Positions 6,013-48,868 of a DNA stretch of 64,000 nucleotides are shown piece by piece. Source of the DNA: Laetmonice hystrix (taxonomy: Eukaryota); assembly GCA_965235115.1 (NCBI GenBank), contig OZ249451.1:20336001-20400000 (forward strand), read 5' to 3'. How positions within the stretch are numbered: position 1 is the stretch's first letter; each line of letters begins with the position of its first letter. The position numbers and the translations under genes are program-made. The notes under the pieces were generated by a model, which worked only from the letters and a program-made list of their open reading frames with translations, was not told the DNA's origin and did not search any database.

Positions 6013-6165
6013 NNNNNNNNNNNNNNNNNNNNNNNNNNNNNNNNNNNNNNNNNNNNNNNNNNNNNNNNNNNNNNNNNNNNNNNNNNNNNNNNNNNNNNNN
6101 NNNNNNNNNNNNNNNNNNNNNNNNNNNNNNNNNNNNNNNNNNNNNNNNNNNNNNNNNNNNNNNNN
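6013..6165. other. Assembly gap (153 N)
   Basis: Run of N. Confidence 1.
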
Positions 6166-6217: not shown

Positions 6218-6295
6218 CACTACGGTTACCCTGTAGATCCGAATTTGTGTGTCGATGTAAGCGACAAATTCGTATCTGCGGTGTATAGTGTAGTG
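6218..6295 (+). ncRNA. mir-10: miR-10 precursor hairpin; 5p arm 6227-6249 UACCCUGUAGAUCCGAAUUUGUG, 3p arm about 6265-6286 CAAAUUCGUAUCUGCGGUGUAU
   Basis: The 5p arm is identical to canonical miR-10a-5p. The arms pair (CGAATTTGT/ACAAATTCG perfect, then GU-containing pairs) and a basal stem cactac/gtagtg closes the hairpin. UGUG lies at the loop junction (6246-6249) and a CNNC motif (CTGC 6303-6306) about 17 nt after the 3p end. Its position 5' of Hox4 on the same strand is the known bilaterian location. Confidence 0.97.
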
Positions 6296-42300: not shown

Positions 42301-43457
42301 GGGCATACTTTCATACGATAGTATTATATACTTCAAGTCACACCTCGAGTGACACATTTAAAAGGCACGCATGTCATATATAAACCTACTTTTTTATGTA
42401 GCCATATTTTATGTCGAAGCCTACACGCCCGTTAGAACTCTTTATATAGCTCTCTTTATATACCAATTCTTTTATTTGGTGCAACTTATCTTAAAAGGTG
42501 ATAAACAGATTGGTTTTTTATAGCCGATTTACAATACGTAATTTGGGCCTGGAAGTCGGCGACAATGGCCTCGTTGGCTGATACTAAGCCGAGGACATTA
42601 AGTTTGAAATGACTAGTTGAAAACAGCGGTGTCTGTGTTATATGGGGGACAACCCTCAGAGAGCTGTGTAATTTATGACCCGCTGCAACTTCAGTACTCC
42701 CCGCTTGCATGTCTGGCCCCAGCCAGACCTCTGACGGTACCGCCTCACTGTCAGACAGGCTCGGCGAGTTTTATGGGGTTTGCCTGCTGAGGGTCGACGG
42801 CGAGTGGCAAGCGTGGATTACGTCATCAGTCTGTGGGAACTGAGCCCCGGATAGCCAGTCATTACGTAACGCGCGAGTCCAGTCGTCGATTCGCTAACCG
42901 GACAACTCCGCGGGAAGTTTAGGATGGGAATCGATTTTCCGCGCGGCATCTGTTCAAAACGAATATTCCACAGGGAGGGTGAAAACGTGAAGTTTGCCAT
43001 CGAAGTTTGGTGTTAGTGAAACGAATGTTTCTGAAGGTGGTGGTGGTTTTGGTGGGGAGGGTTTGCGCGCGGGGTTTCAGAGAAGGAAGGGGTAAGTTGA
43101 TAGGGAGACCGTGGGATGGGAGGGAGGGAGGGGGGTACGGCCCGCCTCGGTGGCTGTGACTGGCAGCACAGCGGGCCGGTGGCGGGGTGAGGGGGGCGGG
43201 GCTGGGGGCCTGTGTCCGCACTGCAGTACTTCACCACCACCAGCCCCGCACGGGTTGGTGTGGAGGGGGTGGGGGTGGGAGGCGGGGGGGGGGGGTCAAC
43301 AAGTCGGGGAGACTGACAACTGGACATAGTACCAATATTACCGCACTGATTTATCGACCCAAATAACATGGCACAATCTCGATATGTTTCACGCCCTGAG
43401 ATCAATCAGAAAGTCTCAAACTTTCCTAACCTTTCTGGTAACAGAAGGGGTTCTACA

Positions 43458-43471
43458 GCGCCCCCTGCTGG
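43458..43471 (-). promoter_or_regulatory. Strong candidate CTCF site (TGA-CCAGCAGGGGGCGC-TG), about 0.9 kb upstream of the Hox4 ATG
   Basis: Full match to the CTCF core with consensus-like flanks. Confidence 0.65.
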
Positions 43472-43723
43472 TCATACTGTGAGAAACAGAAAGTTTGATC
43501 CCTCTCCCAGCCACATGCCTTCCTATACCTCGACCCGAACTCATTGCACTTTTCAATCCCTCCAGTAGCTTGGCCGTCAGTTAGGCCATTCCGCGGCTCT
43601 ACACATCCTGGCCAACGCGTCGCGCCTGATTCAAATGCAAAACCGAAGCACAAAGACTTTTTTCTGGTTTCAGGCCCTGAAGCCACCAAGACTGACGGCT
43701 GTGTGGTTTGCCATCACCCCATA

Positions 43724-43806
43724 CCCCCTTCCCCTCCGCCACCCCCTCCCAACCCACCCCCACCCCCACCCCCACCCCACCCCCACCCCCACCCCAACCC
43801 CCTCCC
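43724..43806. repeat. C-rich (CCCCCA)n-like tract upstream of Hox4
   Basis: More than 10 consecutive C3-C5 runs. Confidence 0.85.
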
Positions 43807-44217
43807 GTACACTCTCTCGGACGTCCTATCTACATATTACATAACTCTCATTAAAACCCCGCTGGCCGTCTTCCTTACGTACCCCCACCCCCTACCCCCA
43901 CCCCACCCACTTCATCCTCTCCTCTTTATTGCGGATTAATCAGATTCCAGCTTTTGCCCTTTGTTTTAATCCTACGCCTCTCCCTTTTTGTCCGTAATTT
44001 TAAAATCAATACTTTTAACAGCGCCGAACATGAATAAATAATTAGTTGGCGGAGCGATTTATTCTCATAAGCACTTGAAATATGTTGGCGCGCTATAACG
44101 CACCTCAACTATGACCGCGCGCGCGATTACTTCGCCATTAAATCCAATCTCATGTGCAGTTCACTCGCAGTAGCTGACTGGCAAGCACTCACTTCGGCTT
44201 CACACAGCGCTCCCCAA

Positions 44218-44295
44218 CTGTCAAACCATGATGGAGGTCAAAGTTGAGGCTGCTCGACGCTGATTGGCTGCTGTAGACCACGTGATATGTAAATA
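44218..44295 (+). promoter_or_regulatory. Candidate Hox4 proximal promoter: TALE site CTGTCA (44218), DR1-like AGGTCAaAGTTGA (44235), inverted CCAAT (44263), E-box CACGTG (44279), GTAAATA (44289)
   Basis: The motifs are read directly 80-160 nt upstream of the ATG. NF-Y and USF are known activators of the vertebrate Hoxb4 promoter. Confidence 0.6.
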
Positions 44296-44376
44296 TCTAC
44301 ATATAGGGAGGGACTAGTCGACTCAAAGACGACAAGTAGAGAGAAAAATTATTTCCACCCAATTCAGCCAAAATTA

Positions 44377-44929
44377 ATGACCATGAGTTCGTTTTTGATG
44401 AACTCGAGCCCCTATGTGGAGCCAAAATTCCCTCCAAATGAGGAATATTCTCACAATAACTACATCCCGAATACGCAGCCCGAGGATTTTTATCGACGAG
44501 CGGCGCAAAATTATGGTTACGGTGCCTCTGGAGCTCCTGACCATCGCCGCTTCGCGCAGGAGAGTTTTCCGGCCAGTTCGAGCTATGGATGTTCGCCGTC
44601 AAACGGAGTTTCTCTCAATGCTGTAGCAGCTGTAAGCGCGGCAAATACCCAAGGACCAGGATATGCACCTTCTTCATCACACGGGGAAAACGATGTGTTA
44701 TCGCCATCGACGGAGGCAAACTGTCAACCGAGAAACAGTCCGCCTAACACGACCAGCATGCCGCAATGTACACAACAGGGAGTCAGCCATAGTCCGGGCC
44801 CCCAACACCCACTCGGCCACACTACCGTCAACAGTAACATGACCAACAACAACACACACAACACGACAACCAACACAAGTCCACCGGTCATCTATCCTTG
44901 GATGAAGCGAGTACATTTAGGATCATCAA
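44377..44929 (+). CDS. Hox4: Hox4/Deformed coding exon 1
   Basis: Group-4 N-terminal motif MTMSSFLMNSSPYVEPKFPPNEEYS and hexapeptide IYPWMKRVH (YPWM 44893-44904). A GTAAGT donor at 44930 gives phase 1. Confidence 0.96.
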
Positions 44930-47900
44930 GTAAGTTCACGCTAACATTCCTTGCTACTTTTTACGGGTCGAGTTGGCGGCGTTCGCTCGACCTAACTCCC
45001 GTTGTCACGTTGTCAGTTCGAAGCGAGGCCTTACCCCGGTCGACACGGTCCCAACTATCGCCGTTTTCTAACTCCCCATGGCGTTAATTTCTCAAGATAA
45101 CGTATGAAATCGACACCAAACATCCTAATTGACATCCATAGACATGTTTGCGGCCCCTGTTGTTCTTGAAAACAACTATTTTGGTCACGTTCATAGTTGT
45201 AAACAAACGCCACGAGACCCAGTCGGCTTCCTTCGAAACTAGGCAATGGCGTGCATATATTAGGGTCGAAAGCAGACGACATTTGTAAATCACCACCTAA
45301 ATGGGACCATAAACTGAGCCGGGGCCGTCTGCTTCTGTCAAATCCTCACATTAAGTGACATTTGGCTATAACGTGACGTACTTGGTGATTATCCCGGTAA
45401 ACTTCAGTCACGTTTAGTGGTTTAGGTAACATTTGGGCCAACGCGTCATTCTGGAGACGATTTGAGCATGGTTTACGTCAGTGGTATAAAACAACCAATC
45501 TCAGTTACATTGAGAGGATGCGACTAAAGTTGAGACACTTGTATGTTGGGGTTGATTGTTATGTTAAGGGTGTAGAATGCTATGGTGGTTTAGATTCGGG
45601 ACAGTGACTGCGGAAGCCATGGTTGAGGTGACTTAGCCGTGTGTAGACCTATACACTCGGTGCACTGACTGCATCCATGGTTGTATATCTCTCATACAGT
45701 CTATATTCACCGTGTGTTCTCCCCTGACAATCCCCGCCGGCCGTGTTAGAGGTAGCTTGGTGTCTGGCTGTATCTTACAGTCAACATTGACCCCGAGTTT
45801 ACCATTGTTGTGTGCCAGGGCCAGCCGTGCCTGTGGCTGCCGTTGACCGGGGGCCAGCGGTGACCGACCGACCGACCCGCCCCGGCCACCTCACCACCCG
45901 TCCCCCGGCTACCACTCAGTCCGTTCCCGGGACGTCCCACGCCAAACTTACCGTGCCCCAGTACACCGCACAACACGCTTCAAATTGCTCTCTTTCATCG
46001 CAAACCATGGGTGTGAAGTTTGTTTACGTTGTTGGAAACCAGTGCCGAAAGTTACCGACTTTGTTCGCGTGGCTACCACATAGACAAAAAAACTACCACT
46101 TCCGGTCGATTTTTTTACACTAAGTGCCACGGTAGACCACGTGGTTTCTTGTGTGCATATATTCATGACTTGTTTGGTGTGCACTTGATGTATTGTTATG
46201 GGAAAAGATAGACCTTCTCTTTTGAGAGAAAGACCTTTGAATCTCCTGCGAAGTTAATGTGGTTGATAAGGTATACGACAAAACGCTACCATCGCTTCAC
46301 TGTTAGCCCATGGGGAAGATTAGTTCTAAAAATCGCCGCACCGAGCGCTGGCTGTCCTACCACTCTTCGTATCTGTGTAAACATAGGGAAACTGCTGCTA
46401 GCACTATCTCATAATTCCAGGGTTTAATCGCCGCTACATCTATGTAATCTAGCATCAGCGTTCTAGCCGTGGGAGAAAAAGGCGGGGTGGGTGTGGCGGT
46501 TGGGGGGGGGGGGGAGAGAGAGGGGGGGTTGGGGGGACGTCTGGGTAGGACAATGCGCCTCAGTGGCTAGCAGTGGGGGCCATGTGGTTTATTGTGTGGT
46601 GATGCCCGCGCTCCCAGACCAACATCTGGCGTCCATGGTTACATCAACATGACCGGTCTCATCAGCCTCCCCTCCCCGCCACCTCCACCGGCTCTCGGCC
46701 CGTCCCGTGGGGTGCCAACACCAGGGCCTGGCCGGGACCAGGAGAGTCGGCAACCGGGGGCCTAAACCAGCCGGCCACCGGCCCTGCCCGGCCCGGTCAG
46801 CCCGGCCAGGGCCAGCCTGCCCCTCGGGCGAGCAACCCAAGCACGGGACTAATCATCGAAACCTATTCCTCATTATTTGTTTACAAGTCTCCGCCGAAAT
46901 ATCCATATCCATTATACTCACCCCCACCCACCCCCTCCCTCCCCCATACACCACTTACTCACACGACTAATTAAAACAGACTCTACGGTTGAGTCTGTGG
47001 TACCTTAGACCCCTCATCCATCATTCCGTCCAAAAAAATCTCATCTAAAAGGTCCCGCTCATTATAACTGGTTAACTGTATACAAAACTAGGAAACTTTC
47101 CCTAAATACACTTACACGACTATAACTGCAGCGAGTCGATGCGTCCCGGACCCCCCACCCCCACTCCGGAACAGTTTAAGCCAGACCAACCCTCCATAAT
47201 GGGTGCTACAAGTTGCCCAGTGAGAAACTAATTGTAGACGATTTGTCAAGCTGTGCCCCAGCGCCACCACGATACATTCACTATACAAGAACAGTCCTCT
47301 GACTATAGCACATATACCCTGGTGTATTCGGGTCCAAGTCCCTTGTCATAACACTCAGGTACATATACTCTAACCTACATGTATATGTCATTCATGTTGA
47401 GCGTGTTACCTGAGCATCCCTGGCGTCACATGACGCCTAATGTGGCCAACACGGTTTTTTTTAGCGTCCAGTGTCCGAATATTACAGGGATAAAAAATTT
47501 GTTCACGGCCAGAGCGCCAACGCCGACTTGTGGTCAAAACCACAGCGGTGGCTGCCCCCTGCCTATTCCCACAACCATTCCCACACCCACTCACACGCCC
47601 AATCACACCACGCACATATCCACGCACACACTCTGAGCGGCCATGTTGAATCATAGAAATCTAGTTCAAGCCTATGTCTCATAACTAGGACATCACATAC
47701 AGTCGGCTCTTCAGAAGTTTGGCATGGGAAAGTTTTATTACATATCAGCCTCGACGTATTCACAGCATATGTGGATCTGAGTTAGAACATGTAACTTTCA
47801 AAAGATGTTTTTTATTTTTATATATTTTTTCTATGCAGACGGTTTCCGTGGGTTGGGTTTTTCTTGTTTTTTTTTTTAAAGGGGGTATTTATCACAAGCT

Positions 47901-48527: not shown

Positions 48528-48868
48528 CCGCGCAGAACTACGGCAGTGACTCCAAACGAACACGGACCGCCTACACTCGACATCAAATTCTCGAGTTGGA
48601 GAAAGAATTTCACTTCAACCGCTATTTGACACGGAGACGGCGAATCGAAATCGCTCACTCGCTCTGTCTAACGGAGAGACAAATCAAGATTTGGTTCCAG
48701 AACCGACGGATGAAATGGAAGAAGGACCACAAGTTGCCCAACACCAAAGTTCGGTTGTCGGATTCCTCCAACAACAACGGGTCTGAGATGGGAATGTCTC
48801 CGGAGAGAGACTGTACACCGGCAGGTCTAACGTCTCTATCTCCGGAACATGACGATATATCGGCCTGA
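48528..48868 (+). CDS. Hox4: Hox4/Deformed coding exon 2 (homeodomain 48551-48730, LPNTK motif, stop TGA 48866-48868)
   Basis: [60 protein letters not shown] followed by KLPNTK, which is diagnostic of paralogy group 4. It is in frame with exon 1; the total is 894 nt = 297 aa plus stop. Confidence 0.97.

What the first reader, a model, noticed from the sequence alone, without database searches (positions are those of the whole stretch)
44330..44409. Hox4 5' leader apparently conserved at nucleotide level with vertebrate Hox4 leaders
Seen: CGACAAgtagaGAGAAAAATTAtttccacccaattcagccaAAATTA-ATGACCATGAGTTCGTTTTTGATGAACTC, with no upstream AUG in the leader. From recall (needs alignment), vertebrate group-4 genes share a leader of the form CGACAA...GAGAAAAATTA..TTT..CAC...AAATTA-ATG and HOXA4 begins ATGACCATGAGCTCGTTTTTGATAAACTC. 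Non-coding identity across such a distance is very rare. Inference: an ancient post-transcriptional control element for Hox4 (translation initiation, RNA-binding protein site) or a downstream core-promoter element, little described outside chordates.
Basis: partly seen in the sequence, partly recalled or inferred. Interest (0 to 1): 0.8.

Follow-up and report, generated by a model that had tools for sequence, protein, structure and literature searches.

The report
Bilaterian-conserved Hox4 promoter and leader
The roughly 50 untranslated bases before the start codon of this spiralian Hox4 (Deformed) gene are recognisably the same in nemertean, snail, horseshoe crab, crab, lamprey and shark Hox4 genes, one of very few non-coding sequences alignable across all bilaterian animals; what it does is not yet known.

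Summary
The quoted text is at 44330-44405, directly before exon 1 of a Hox4/Dfd gene (exon 1 44377-44929, homeobox exon 48528-48868).

With DNA fetched by tools rather than recalled, the same leader words stand in the same order and place in a nemertean, a gastropod, Limulus, a crab, a lamprey Hox4, elephant-shark HoxC4 and a vertebrate HoxD4 mRNA. The words are ACGACAA, GAGAAAAATTA and AAATTA-ATG-RCC-ATG. A published mouse Hoxa4 primer carries two of them. Zebra-shark Hoxb4a has largely lost them.

The similarity beats dinucleotide shuffles. The exact 11-mer is expected 0.03 times per 64 kb.

The leader is the 3' part of a colinear block of about 170 nt: inverted CCAAT, E-box, GGAGGG, leader, two in-frame AUGs and codons 2-9 with constrained synonymous sites. 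The upstream half matches the mapped human HOXB4 NF-Y/USF core promoter. The leader lies downstream of the HOXB4 start sites.

It is not coding, not a uORF in this window, not an Rfam RNA and not complementary to 18S rRNA. Its function is unresolved. I favour a translation-start module on the mRNA, with a weak AUG1 and a strong AUG2, over a DNA-level promoter-proximal element.

I found no paper describing the cross-phylum conservation. I class it as a new member of the known kind "bilaterian-conserved promoters". The scan had noted this same stretch once before.

The parts
44263..44267 (+). Inverted CCAAT box (ATTGG), about -114 from AUG1.
   Evidence: Invariant in 11 of 12 aligned Hox4 promoters; Limulus has CACTGG. 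It corresponds to the NF-Y-type HxRE-1 site of the human HOXB4 core promoter (PMC2193192; PMC3675019).
44279..44284 (+). E-box CACGTG, -98..-93, 11 nt after the CCAAT word.
   Evidence: CAYGTG or CACATG sits at the same place in all 12 sequences. It is the counterpart of the HOXB4 HxRE-2 site bound by USF1/2. Conserved E-boxes occur in other Hoxa promoters (PMC9456764).
44285..44294 (+). ATATGTAAAT word next to the E-box, seen in protostomes only (ATATGCTAAT in chelicerate and crab).
   Evidence: Alignment A1. It is octamer-like. No factor was tested.
44306..44312 (+). GGGAGGG word, -71..-65, about 17-20 nt before ACGACAA.
   Evidence: GGAGGG or GGCGGAG is aligned in all lineages. It falls in the zone where the human HOXB4 5'-RACE start sites lie, 65-90 bp before the ATG.
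44329..44335 (+). ACGACAA, first leader word, -48..-42.
   Evidence: Present in the window clade, Tubulanus, Limulus, lamprey and Callorhinchus C4. The D4 mRNA has AGACAA and the mouse Hoxa4 primer has ACGACAC.
44341..44351 (+). GAGAAAAATTA, second leader word, -36..-26. It contains an ATTA/TAAT core.
   Evidence: One hit in the window against 0.03 expected. It is exact in Tubulanus, lamprey, C4, the D4 mRNA and the mouse Hoxa4 primer, 19-25 nt before the ATG.
44352..44369 (+). Pyrimidine-rich middle part of the leader (TTTCCACCCAATTCAGCC).
   Evidence: TTTCCA(C/T)CCAATTCA is shared with Limulus and TTTTTCCACCC with lamprey. Jawed vertebrates have a pyrimidine tract plus CAG here instead, a likely 3' splice site. 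The mRNA contig of a relative (run X8) ends at 44367.
44370..44385 (+). Start module AAAATTA-ATG-ACC-ATG. AUG1 (44377-44379) has U at -3. AUG2 (44383-44385) sits in an ACC-AUG-A context. UAA and UGA overlap AUG1 in the other two frames.
   Evidence: ATTAATG columns are invariant or nearly so. U stands at -3 of AUG1 in all 12 sequences. R stands at -3 of AUG2 in 12 of 12, and C at -1 in 11 of 12. Hoxa4 and Hoxc4 are listed among mammalian genes with a conserved poor-context AUG (PMC8892498).
44380..44403 (+). Codons 2-9, with constrained synonymous sites.
   Evidence: The same third letter is shared in 0.69 of pairs here, against 0.43 in the equally conserved PKFPP-EEY block. Leu7 is TTG in 9 of 9 lineages and Ser5 is TCG in 7 of 8. 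Proline codons in the control block score 0.22-0.36.
44385..44405 (+). Possible 9-bp hairpin (GAGUUCGUU / UUU / GAUGAACUC) starting at the G of AUG2.
   Evidence: Predicted. Ninety per cent of cells pair, but covariation is no better than shuffles (210 of 500) and there is only one compensatory change. Inconclusive.
44377..44929 (+). Hox4/Dfd exon 1 (MTMSSFLMNSSPYVEPKFPP ... YPWMKRVH), with a GTAAGT donor at 44930.
   Evidence: ORF and motifs. A spliced mRNA contig of a relative joins 44929 to the exon 2 text. Homologues are Dfd/Hox4 proteins.
48528..48868 (+). Hox4/Dfd exon 2 with the homeobox and the stop codon.
   Evidence: The homeodomain is Hox4-type. In the genome it lies between a Hox5-like and a Hox3-like homeobox.

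Best explanation
The stretch is the last 48 nt before the start codon of a lophotrochozoan Hox4/Deformed gene. It is the best-conserved part of a block of about 170 nt inherited from the bilaterian ancestor. In order, the block reads: inverted CCAAT, E-box, GGAGGG, ACGACAA, GAGAAAAATTA, AAATTA-AUG1-RCC-AUG2, then codons 2-9.

The upstream half is the proximal promoter, of the NF-Y plus USF type mapped in human HOXB4. The stretch in question lies downstream of that promoter's start sites, so it is transcribed.

My best reading is that it works mainly on the mRNA, as the translation-start module of Hox4.
- The leader is G-poor and unstructured, with sequence-specific words for a still unknown reader.
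- AUG1 is deliberately weak (U at -3). An in-frame AUG2 six bases later sits in a strong RCC-AUG context.
- Stop codons in both other frames overlap AUG1. They end any upstream reading frames of the long transcripts that start further upstream.

Shown here: the conservation, its extent, its non-coding nature, the AUG contexts and the synonymous constraint.

Inferred: that the stretch is transcribed in this species (by homology with HOXB4 and from relatives' RNA contigs), and that selection acts on the RNA rather than on the DNA.
For: Conservation and colinearity across 12 Hox4 loci from three superphyla.

Human HOXB4:
- 5'-RACE start sites lie 65-90 bp before the ATG.
- Full basal promoter activity sits in -153..-55, that is, without this stretch (PMC2193192).

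RNA signatures:
- U stands at -3 of AUG1 in 12 of 12 sequences, and R at -3 of AUG2 in 12 of 12. Codon 2 is always RYC.
- Hoxa4 and Hoxc4 are already listed among genes with a conserved poor-context AUG in mammals (PMC8892498).
- Synonymous sites of codons 2-9 are constrained, 0.69 against 0.43 in a control block of equal protein conservation.
- The distance from ACGACAA to AUG1 is exactly 48 nt in the window clade, Tubulanus and Limulus, despite an internal 1-nt shift in Limulus.
- uORFs of Callorhinchus C4, Tubulanus and Limulus all end at the UAA that overlaps AUG1.

Transcribed in relatives:
- Spliced mRNA contigs L010 and L011 contain the whole block.
- Two metatranscriptome runs hold leader 31-mers.

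Specificity: the Hox5-like and Lox5-like genes of the same genome lack the leader words.
Against: Other published start sites for Hox4 paralogues lie only 15-21 nt before the ATG: mouse Hoxa4 and human HOXD4 primer extension. A relative's mRNA contig ends at -10. If those are true starts, most of the stretch is promoter DNA and not leader.

No known RNA-binding protein or RNA partner explains ACGACAA or GAGAAAAATTA. There is no RNA structure with covariation and no 18S complementarity.

Because AUG2 is in frame, the weak AUG1 changes protein output little.

The colinear conservation continues into the untranscribed promoter, and half of the known bilaterian-conserved elements are promoters. 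DNA-level selection is therefore a live alternative.
Confidence: 0.42

Rival explanations
1. The element acts on DNA. The stretch is the TSS-proximal part of the ancestral Hox4 promoter, downstream of or around the start site. It would be bound by transcription factors: for example, homeodomain proteins on the two invariant AAATTA/TAAT cores for auto- or cross-regulation, and a GAGA-type factor on GAGAG. Alternatively it acts as a core-promoter platform. On this reading, transcription of the stretch is incidental.
For: - Colinear conservation runs from the CCAAT box through the leader.
- Of the 25 known bilaterian-conserved regulatory segments, 12 are promoters, often with CCAAT boxes (PMC10735318).
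- Hox 'hyperconserved leaders' in mouse turned out to be promoters with E-box and CAAT box (PMC9456764).
- Start sites 15-21 nt before the ATG are reported for Hoxa4 and HOXD4, and a relative's mRNA contig ends at -10. These would put the words at -40..-5 of a start site.
- The most invariant non-coding columns are the two ATTA cores.
- From my own recall, not checked here: Ubx protein binds TAA repeats in the Ubx leader.
Against: - The HOXB4 fragment -153..-55 has full basal activity without the stretch.
- No promoter activity was found in the 1 kb before the mouse Hoxd4 ATG.
- The AUG-context pattern, and synonymous constraint confined to codons 2-9, are not expected from factor binding.
- No canonical TATA, Inr-DPE or MTE arrangement is conserved. 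AGACG occurs only in the window clade, and the A/T tract is at the wrong distance from every candidate start.
- The binding factors are unknown.
Confidence: 0.33
2. The stretch is a splice and processing junction. It would be the branch point, pyrimidine tract and 3' splice site where upstream non-coding exons of long pri-miR-10/Hox transcripts join the first coding exon, and it would be conserved for splicing.
For: - Jawed-vertebrate B4a, C4 and D4 leaders have a pyrimidine tract plus CAG 8-9 nt before the ATG.
- Mouse Hoxd4 P2 transcripts start 5.2 kb upstream, carry miR-10b in an intron and splice onto the first coding exon (PMC3185001).
- The window has TTTCCACCCAATTCAG at 44352-44367, and a relative's mRNA contig ends exactly there.
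- A mir-10 hairpin lies 38 kb upstream on the same strand.
Against: - Tubulanus, Limulus, Petrolisthes and Gigantopelta have no AG between GAGAAAAATTA and the ATG. Lamprey has only the AG inside ATTAG directly after the 11-mer and none near the ATG. All of them still keep the conserved words.
- mRNA contigs L010 and L011 are unspliced here.
- The reading does not explain AAATTA-AUG or the codon constraint.
Confidence: 0.08
3. The match is chance similarity of AT-rich leaders, or an unannotated coding extension or uORF, and not a conserved non-coding element.
For: - The leader is A/T-rich and short.
- nhmmer E-values between superphyla are weak, 0.06-0.4.
- Frame 0 is open through the leader in the window, and the ACG at -48 is in frame.
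Against: - Shuffle z-scores reach 16, with the best hit always at the homologous place.
- The exact 11-mer is expected 0.03 times per 64 kb.
- The reading frame is not kept. There is a 1-nt shift between the window and Limulus, vertebrate leaders measure 40-46 nt against 48, and the crab has in-frame TAG TAA inside the block.
- The window has no upstream AUG from -89 to -1.
Confidence: 0.02

Closest known systems
Human and mouse HOXB4 proximal promoter: HxRE-1 (NF-Y) plus HxRE-2 E-box (USF1/2). Giannola 2000, PMC2193192; Zhu 2003 as cited in PMC3675019.
   Same: Inverted CCAAT followed by an E-box about 100 nt before the ATG, and a short leader. The 240 bp before the ATG are 97% identical between human and mouse. 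The window's block is colinear with shark and lamprey Hox4 promoters of this type.
   Different: The published work covers only mammals and only -153..-55. The leader words and their presence in protostomes are not described there. Binding of NF-Y and USF in this animal is untested.
Bilaterian-conserved regulatory DNA segments (Frith & Ni 2023, PMC10735318; Bicores of Clarke 2012, PMC3410860).
   Same: Non-coding DNA alignable between protostomes and deuterostomes, at a fixed position and orientation next to a developmental regulator gene. It is promoter-type with a CCAAT box.
   Different: Hox4 is not among the 25 segments or the 2 Bicores. Those screens discard alignments that overlap coding sequence, and this block is contiguous with the conserved first codons, which may be why it was missed. 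That explanation is my inference.
Conserved poor-context start codons and uORFs of mammalian Hox mRNAs (Ivanov 2022, PMC8892498).
   Same: Hoxa4 and Hoxc4 are listed with a pyrimidine at -3 and no G at +4. Hoxc4 has a uORF conserved from mammals to fish. The window shows the same UUA-AUG-A context.
   Different: The context is shown here to predate vertebrates. The AUG is not 'obligatory poor', because a strong in-frame AUG follows after two codons. Lamprey and D4 have G at +4.
Hoxa 'IRES-like' and TIE leader elements (Xue 2015, as discussed in PMC9456764).
   Same: Claims of special translational control through conserved Hox leaders, Hoxa4 included.
   Different: Those elements were defined on roughly 1-kb annotated leaders that are mostly promoter DNA, and they are disputed. 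This block is 48 nt, unstructured and next to the AUG.

Membership tests
Bilaterian-conserved non-coding regulatory segment (Frith & Ni type) | Sequence similarity between protostome and deuterostome orthologous loci beyond chance. | tested here: met
   Window against Callorhinchus C4 gives z 6.7 and against lamprey z 3.9. The exact 11-mer sits at the homologous place in three vertebrate Hox4 genes.
Bilaterian-conserved non-coding regulatory segment (Frith & Ni type) | [quoted passage not shown] | tested here: met
   The block is always on the sense strand and ends at the ATG.
Bilaterian-conserved non-coding regulatory segment (Frith & Ni type) | Does not encode protein or a known RNA gene. 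| tested here: met
   The reading frame is not preserved and the crab has in-frame stops. There is no Rfam match in the window at the gathering threshold.
Bilaterian-conserved non-coding regulatory segment (Frith & Ni type) | Regulatory activity. | not testable with these tools
   Needs reporter or deletion experiments.
NF-Y/USF Hox proximal promoter (HOXB4 type) | Inverted CCAAT and E-box within about 20 nt of each other, about 100 nt before the ATG. | tested here: met
   ATTGG at 44263-44267 and CACGTG at 44279-44284, conserved in 11-12 of 12 loci.
NF-Y/USF Hox proximal promoter (HOXB4 type) | Transcription starts shortly downstream, 65-90 nt before the ATG in HOXB4. | not testable with these tools
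   No raw RNA reads of this species were available. The contigs give conflicting hints.
Conserved poor-context start codon (Ivanov 2022) | Pyrimidine at -3 and no G at +4 of the annotated AUG, conserved. | tested here: met
   U at -3 in all 12 sequences. A at +4 in the window, all protostomes, Callorhinchus C4 and the AAG-bearing Stegostoma B4a; lamprey and D4 have G at +4.
Conserved poor-context start codon (Ivanov 2022) | 'Obligatory' class: no nearby in-frame good-context AUG. | tested here: not met
   AUG2 follows two codons later in an RCC-AUG context, in 12 of 12 sequences.
Downstream core promoter element (DPE/MTE) | RGWYV at +28..+32 (or MTE at +18..+27) from an Inr A+1, conserved. | tested here: inconclusive
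   AGACG at 44327-44331 exists only in the window clade; vertebrates and Limulus have AAACG. No start site is known, so the spacing cannot be checked.
Upstream open reading frame | An AUG in the leader with a conserved reading frame. | tested here: not met
   The window has no ATG from -89 to -1. uAUGs in other lineages lie at different places.
Structured leader RNA element (IRES-like, IRE-like) | A conserved secondary structure supported by covariation. | tested here: not met
   The only consensus helix lies in the coding part, and its covariation equals that of shuffles.

The most novel reading that the evidence does not exclude
All bilaterian Hox4/Dfd mRNAs share an ancient, sequence-specific translational control element, ACGACAA..GAGAAAAATTA..AAAUUA-AUG-RCC-AUG plus the first nine codons. 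A conserved RNA-binding protein or ribosome-associated factor would read it. That would give a defined, 48-nt, testable handle on the disputed idea that Hox mRNAs, including the RPL38-dependent Hoxa4, are translated in a specialised way.
Probability: 0.2. Interest if true: 0.85.

Novelty: new member of a known kind. Interest (0 to 1): 0.68.

Why it matters
Non-coding DNA that can still be aligned between protostomes and vertebrates is extremely rare: about 25 segments in the most recent survey, none at a Hox gene. Hox genes are the textbook case of 'deep homology' without known shared cis-regulatory sequence.

A colinear promoter-leader-start block at Hox4 would be a directly comparable regulatory unit across Bilateria. 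It can be mutated in mouse, zebrafish, chelicerates and spiralians alike.

It also bears on the dispute over Hox leaders as translational regulators. It offers a short, well-delimited and evolutionarily validated sequence in place of the kilobase 'leaders' that turned out to be promoters.

It shows as well that screens which drop alignments touching coding exons can miss promoter and leader conservation.

Tried and rejected
1. Base pairing of the leader with 18S rRNA. The genome's own 18S was located. The longest Watson-Crick run is 8 nt, equal to the shuffle median. Rejected.
2. A conserved hairpin after AUG2. It is foldable everywhere, but covariation is no better than shuffles. Not supported.
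3. N-terminal coding extension or near-cognate ACG start. The frame is not kept and the crab has in-frame stops. Rejected.
4. A uORF in this window. None exists.
5. A known RNA family. The window has no Rfam hit at gathering level.
6. TATA box, Inr-DPE, TISU, Pumilio site, nuclear-receptor half-sites in the first codons, and a PBX-HOX composite site. All were examined by eye on alignment A1. None is both canonical and conserved across phyla. These are inferences from the sequence, not tool tests.
7. A 3' splice site as the general explanation. The AG is absent in four protostome lineages.
8. A second copy or paralogous use of the block in this genome. It is single copy and absent from the Hox5-like and Lox5-like leaders.
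9. The metagenome scan for more Hox4 loci was wasted. The tool chose non-conserved peptides and returned one spurious locus.
10. (Rfam SSU family search of the genome) failed for technical reasons and were replaced by a pattern search.
11. P0001, the closest relative at 79% identity, gave no DNA.
12. Gutman 1994 (mouse Hoxb4 promoter) is not held in the library. The supplement of PMC8892498 with CAGE coordinates is not held either.
13. nhmmer profiles give only weak E-values between superphyla. The case rests on position, exact words and shuffle tests.
Full report
**What is at the coordinates.** It directly precedes an ORF that begins MTMSSFLMNSSPYVEPKFPP and ends with YPWMKRVH before a GTAAGT donor at 44930. 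A homeobox exon with a Hox4-type homeodomain follows at 48528-48868. A spliced mRNA contig of a related species joins 44929 to the exon 2 text, which confirms the gene model. The best protein matches are Dfd/Hox4 proteins of phoronids, nemerteans, molluscs, chelicerates and hagfish.

In the whole assembly the window is C21:20336001-20400000. The gene sits in an ordered, same-strand Hox cluster between a Hox5-like and a Hox3-like homeobox. A neighbouring gene carries the Lox5 parapeptide KLTGP, so the animal is a lophotrochozoan. Earlier notes of the scan called it annelid-like or mollusc-like. I did not resolve the phylum.

**Checking the recalled similarity with real sequence.** Through Hox4 proteins found, I fetched the genomic or mRNA context of eleven other Hox4 genes:
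- two unnamed relatives, about 60% protein identity in exon 1;
- a JGI spliced mRNA contig;
- Tubulanus polymorphus (nemertean);
- Gigantopelta aegis (gastropod);
- Limulus polyphemus;
- Petrolisthes manimaculis (crab);
- Lampetra planeri Hox-B4-like;
- Callorhinchus milii HoxC4;
- Stegostoma tigrinum Hoxb4a;
- a vertebrate HoxD4-type mRNA contig.

Printed side by side and aligned (A1), they share the same words in the same order before the start codon. The words are ACGACAA, then GAGAAAAATTA after 3-6 nt, a pyrimidine-rich stretch, and then A(A/T)ATT(A/T) abutting ATG-(A/G)CC-ATG-AG.
- The lamprey even keeps TTTTTCCACCC.
- Limulus keeps TATTTCCATCCAATTCA.
- The gastropod and crab keep the 3' half and a weaker 5' half.
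- The zebra-shark Hoxb4a has lost most of it, including AUG1, which reads AAG.

A published mouse Hoxa4 genotyping primer reads ACGACACCGCGAGAAAAATTAG (PMC7132199). The HoxA paralogue therefore carries two of the words too. I did not fetch human sequence.

**Is it more than chance?** The window leader (-50..-1) was aligned locally to up to 1.5 kb of strictly non-coding upstream DNA of each species, on both strands, and compared with 300 dinucleotide shuffles.

| Species or gene | z-score |
|---|---|
| Tubulanus | 16.4 |
| Limulus | 12.3 |
| Callorhinchus C4 | 6.7 |
| Petrolisthes (crab) | 4.3 |
| Lampetra (lamprey) | 3.9 |
| Gigantopelta (gastropod) | 3.8 |
| Vertebrate D4 mRNA | 1.8 |
| Stegostoma B4a | no signal |

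The best hit for each species from Tubulanus down to the gastropod was on the sense strand at the homologous place.

The exact 11-mer GAGAAAAATTA occurs once in the 64-kb window, against 0.03 expected. It occurs once, on the sense strand, 19-25 nt before the ATG in Tubulanus, lamprey, C4 and the D4 mRNA. Profile searches with nhmmer, trained on one superphylum and run on the other, give only weak E-values of 0.06-0.4. Even so, the top three protostome-to-vertebrate hits are all at the homologous place. BLAST alignments seeded in the coding part run on into the non-coding DNA, to -114 in Tubulanus, -112 in Limulus, -70 in C4 and about -50 in lamprey and D4. It is very strong within protostomes. 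It is moderate but clearly non-random between protostomes and vertebrates.

**Extent of the conserved unit.** The leader is not isolated.

Upstream, all lineages share three words:
- an inverted CCAAT word (44263-44267);
- an E-box 11 nt later (44279-44284);
- a GGAGGG word (44306-44312).

This agrees with the separate first-stage note s1-351904 on the same window. It corresponds to the experimentally defined human HOXB4 core promoter: -153..-55, an NF-Y site plus a USF1/2 E-box, and 5'-RACE start sites 65-90 bp before the ATG (PMC2193192; PMC3675019).

Downstream, nucleotide constraint continues into the coding sequence. Among nine lineages, synonymous third letters of codons 2-10 agree in 0.69 of pairs. 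In the equally invariant peptide PKFPP-EEY they agree in only 0.43 of pairs.
- Leu7 is TTG in 9 of 9 lineages.
- Ser5 is the CpG-containing TCG in 7 of 8.
- The proline codons of the control block agree in only 0.22-0.36 of pairs.

The unit thus spans roughly -115 to +27, with the strongest part from -48 to +27.

The leader words are specific to Hox4. The block is single copy in the 627-Mb genome. The Hox5-like and Lox5-like genes of the same cluster lack the words, although the Lox5-like promoter also has CCAAT and E-boxes.

**What it is not.**
- It is not coding. The central words are shifted by 1 nt between the window and Limulus and compensated later. Vertebrate leaders measure 40-46 nt against 48. 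The crab has in-frame TAG TAA inside the block.
- The window has no upstream AUG between -89 and -1.
- There is no Rfam family at the gathering threshold.
- There is no complementarity to the animal's own 18S rRNA beyond shuffles.
- A 9-bp hairpin starting at the G of AUG2 can form in almost all sequences. Its conservation is explained by primary sequence, and covariation equals shuffles.

**How it most likely works.** Two layers must be kept apart.

1. *Shown.* The two AUGs have an invariant context pattern. AUG1 always has U at -3, and has A at +4 in the window, the protostomes and C4. AUG2, two codons later and in frame, always has a purine at -3 and nearly always CC before it, because codon 2 is always RYC. 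That is a translational signature. Within mammals it is already on record for Hoxa4 and Hoxc4 as a 'conserved poor-context' start (PMC8892498). TTAATGA also places UAA and UGA in the other two frames across AUG1. The uORFs of C4, Tubulanus and Limulus all end at that UAA.

2. *Inferred.* The HOXB4 minimal promoter works without the stretch, and its start sites lie upstream of it. The constraint is contiguous with constrained codons. The distance from ACGACAA to the AUG is fixed at 48 nt in three protostome lineages. I therefore favour selection on the mRNA: a translation-start module whose 5' words are read by an unknown factor. I give this about 0.4.

The main rival, at about 0.33, is selection on DNA as the start-site-proximal part of the promoter. 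The two invariant ATTA cores would be candidate homeodomain sites. In its favour:
- colinearity continues into the untranscribed promoter;
- half of the known bilaterian-conserved segments are promoters;
- mouse 'hyperconserved Hox leaders' proved to be promoters;
- start sites only 15-21 nt before the ATG are reported for mouse Hoxa4 and human HOXD4;
- a relative's mRNA contig ends at -10.

A splice-junction role is plausible for jawed vertebrates, which have a pyrimidine tract plus CAG 8-9 nt before the ATG. Mouse Hoxd4 P2 transcripts carry miR-10b in an intron and splice onto the first coding exon. This cannot explain the protostome sequences that lack an AG.

Long transcripts that contain the whole block do exist in relatives (L010 and L011). 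The region is therefore in RNA at least sometimes. No RNA run of this species was found.

**Comparison with what is known, and novelty.**
- The vertebrate side is partly known: the conserved HOXB4 proximal promoter, the poor-context AUG of Hoxa4/c4 and the Hoxc4 uORF.
- The class is known: Frith & Ni 2023 list 25 bilaterian-conserved regulatory segments, 12 of them promoters, often with CCAAT boxes. None is at a Hox gene. Their pipeline removes conserved regions that encode protein, which would remove this coding-contiguous block.
- Clarke 2012 does not list it either.
- Lin, Ma & Nei 2008 describe conserved flanks of HoxC4 exon 1 only in placental mammals.
- A full-text search for the 11-mer found only the Hoxa4 primer. 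Figures are not searchable, and several papers from 1988-1994 are not held. An older description among Hox4 paralogues therefore cannot be excluded.

I class the finding as a new member of a known kind.

**Verdict.** This is a real, deep, Hox4-specific conservation of promoter, leader and start region across Bilateria. Its mechanism is open, with a modest lean to the RNA level. Interest 0.68.

Noticed in passing
window 6220-6292 (+): A mir-10 hairpin lies 38 kb upstream of Hox4 on the same strand. The mature TACCCTGTAGATCCGAATTTGTG is read at 6227-6249. It scores 44.4 bits, just under Rfam's 47.5 cut-off, so the window-wide gathering search missed it. It sits directly after the N run 6013-6165, which I left untouched.
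   Followed up: partly
window 44024-44110 (about -353..-270 from the ATG): A second conserved upstream block is shared with relatives L001 and L003. It is rich in homeodomain-type words (CATGAATAAATAATTAG, GATTTATTCTCATAAGC, ATATGTTGGCG..CTATAACGC). It may be an auto- or cross-regulatory element. I did not examine it in distant phyla.
   Followed up: partly
G000 C21:19.52-20.63 Mb (window = 20.336-20.400 Mb): The Hox cluster is ordered and on one strand, with at least 10 homeoboxes over about 1.1 Mb. The gene two places posterior to Hox4 has the Lox5 parapeptide KLTGP, which marks the animal as a lophotrochozoan.
   Followed up: partly
L017:930-1090 and L016:5450-5606 (the genome's Lox5-like and Hox5-like promoters): The Lox5-like promoter carries GCTGATTGGC flanked by two E-boxes (CATGTG, CACGTG), the same grammar as Hox4. 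The Hox5-like promoter has an E-box and a CArG-like CCTTATATGG. Neither has the Hox4 leader words.
   Followed up: partly
L008:1948-2003, L004:2933-2997, L005:1912-2003: uORFs that start at different places in Callorhinchus HoxC4, Tubulanus and Limulus all end at the UAA overlapping AUG1 (UAAUG). In the vertebrate D4 mRNA (L011:623) an upstream AUG is instead in frame and adds 20 codons.
   Followed up: partly
L009:1980-2003, L008:1982-2000, L011:660-682: Jawed-vertebrate Hox4 leaders have a pyrimidine tract plus CAG 8-9 nt before the ATG. It is probably the 3' splice site used by transcripts that start at far-upstream promoters.
   Followed up: no
window 43100-43900: A long low-complexity stretch rich in CCCACCC and CCCCTA lies just upstream of the promoter. 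It gives spurious short BLAST hits to lamprey and shark loci.
   Followed up: no
window 44275-44424 (runs X10, X24): Seawater and other metatranscriptome libraries hold near-identical 31-mers of the leader. One 279-nt contig runs on upstream through a CCAAT box. That is either DNA carry-over or upstream-start transcripts of related animals.
   Followed up: no
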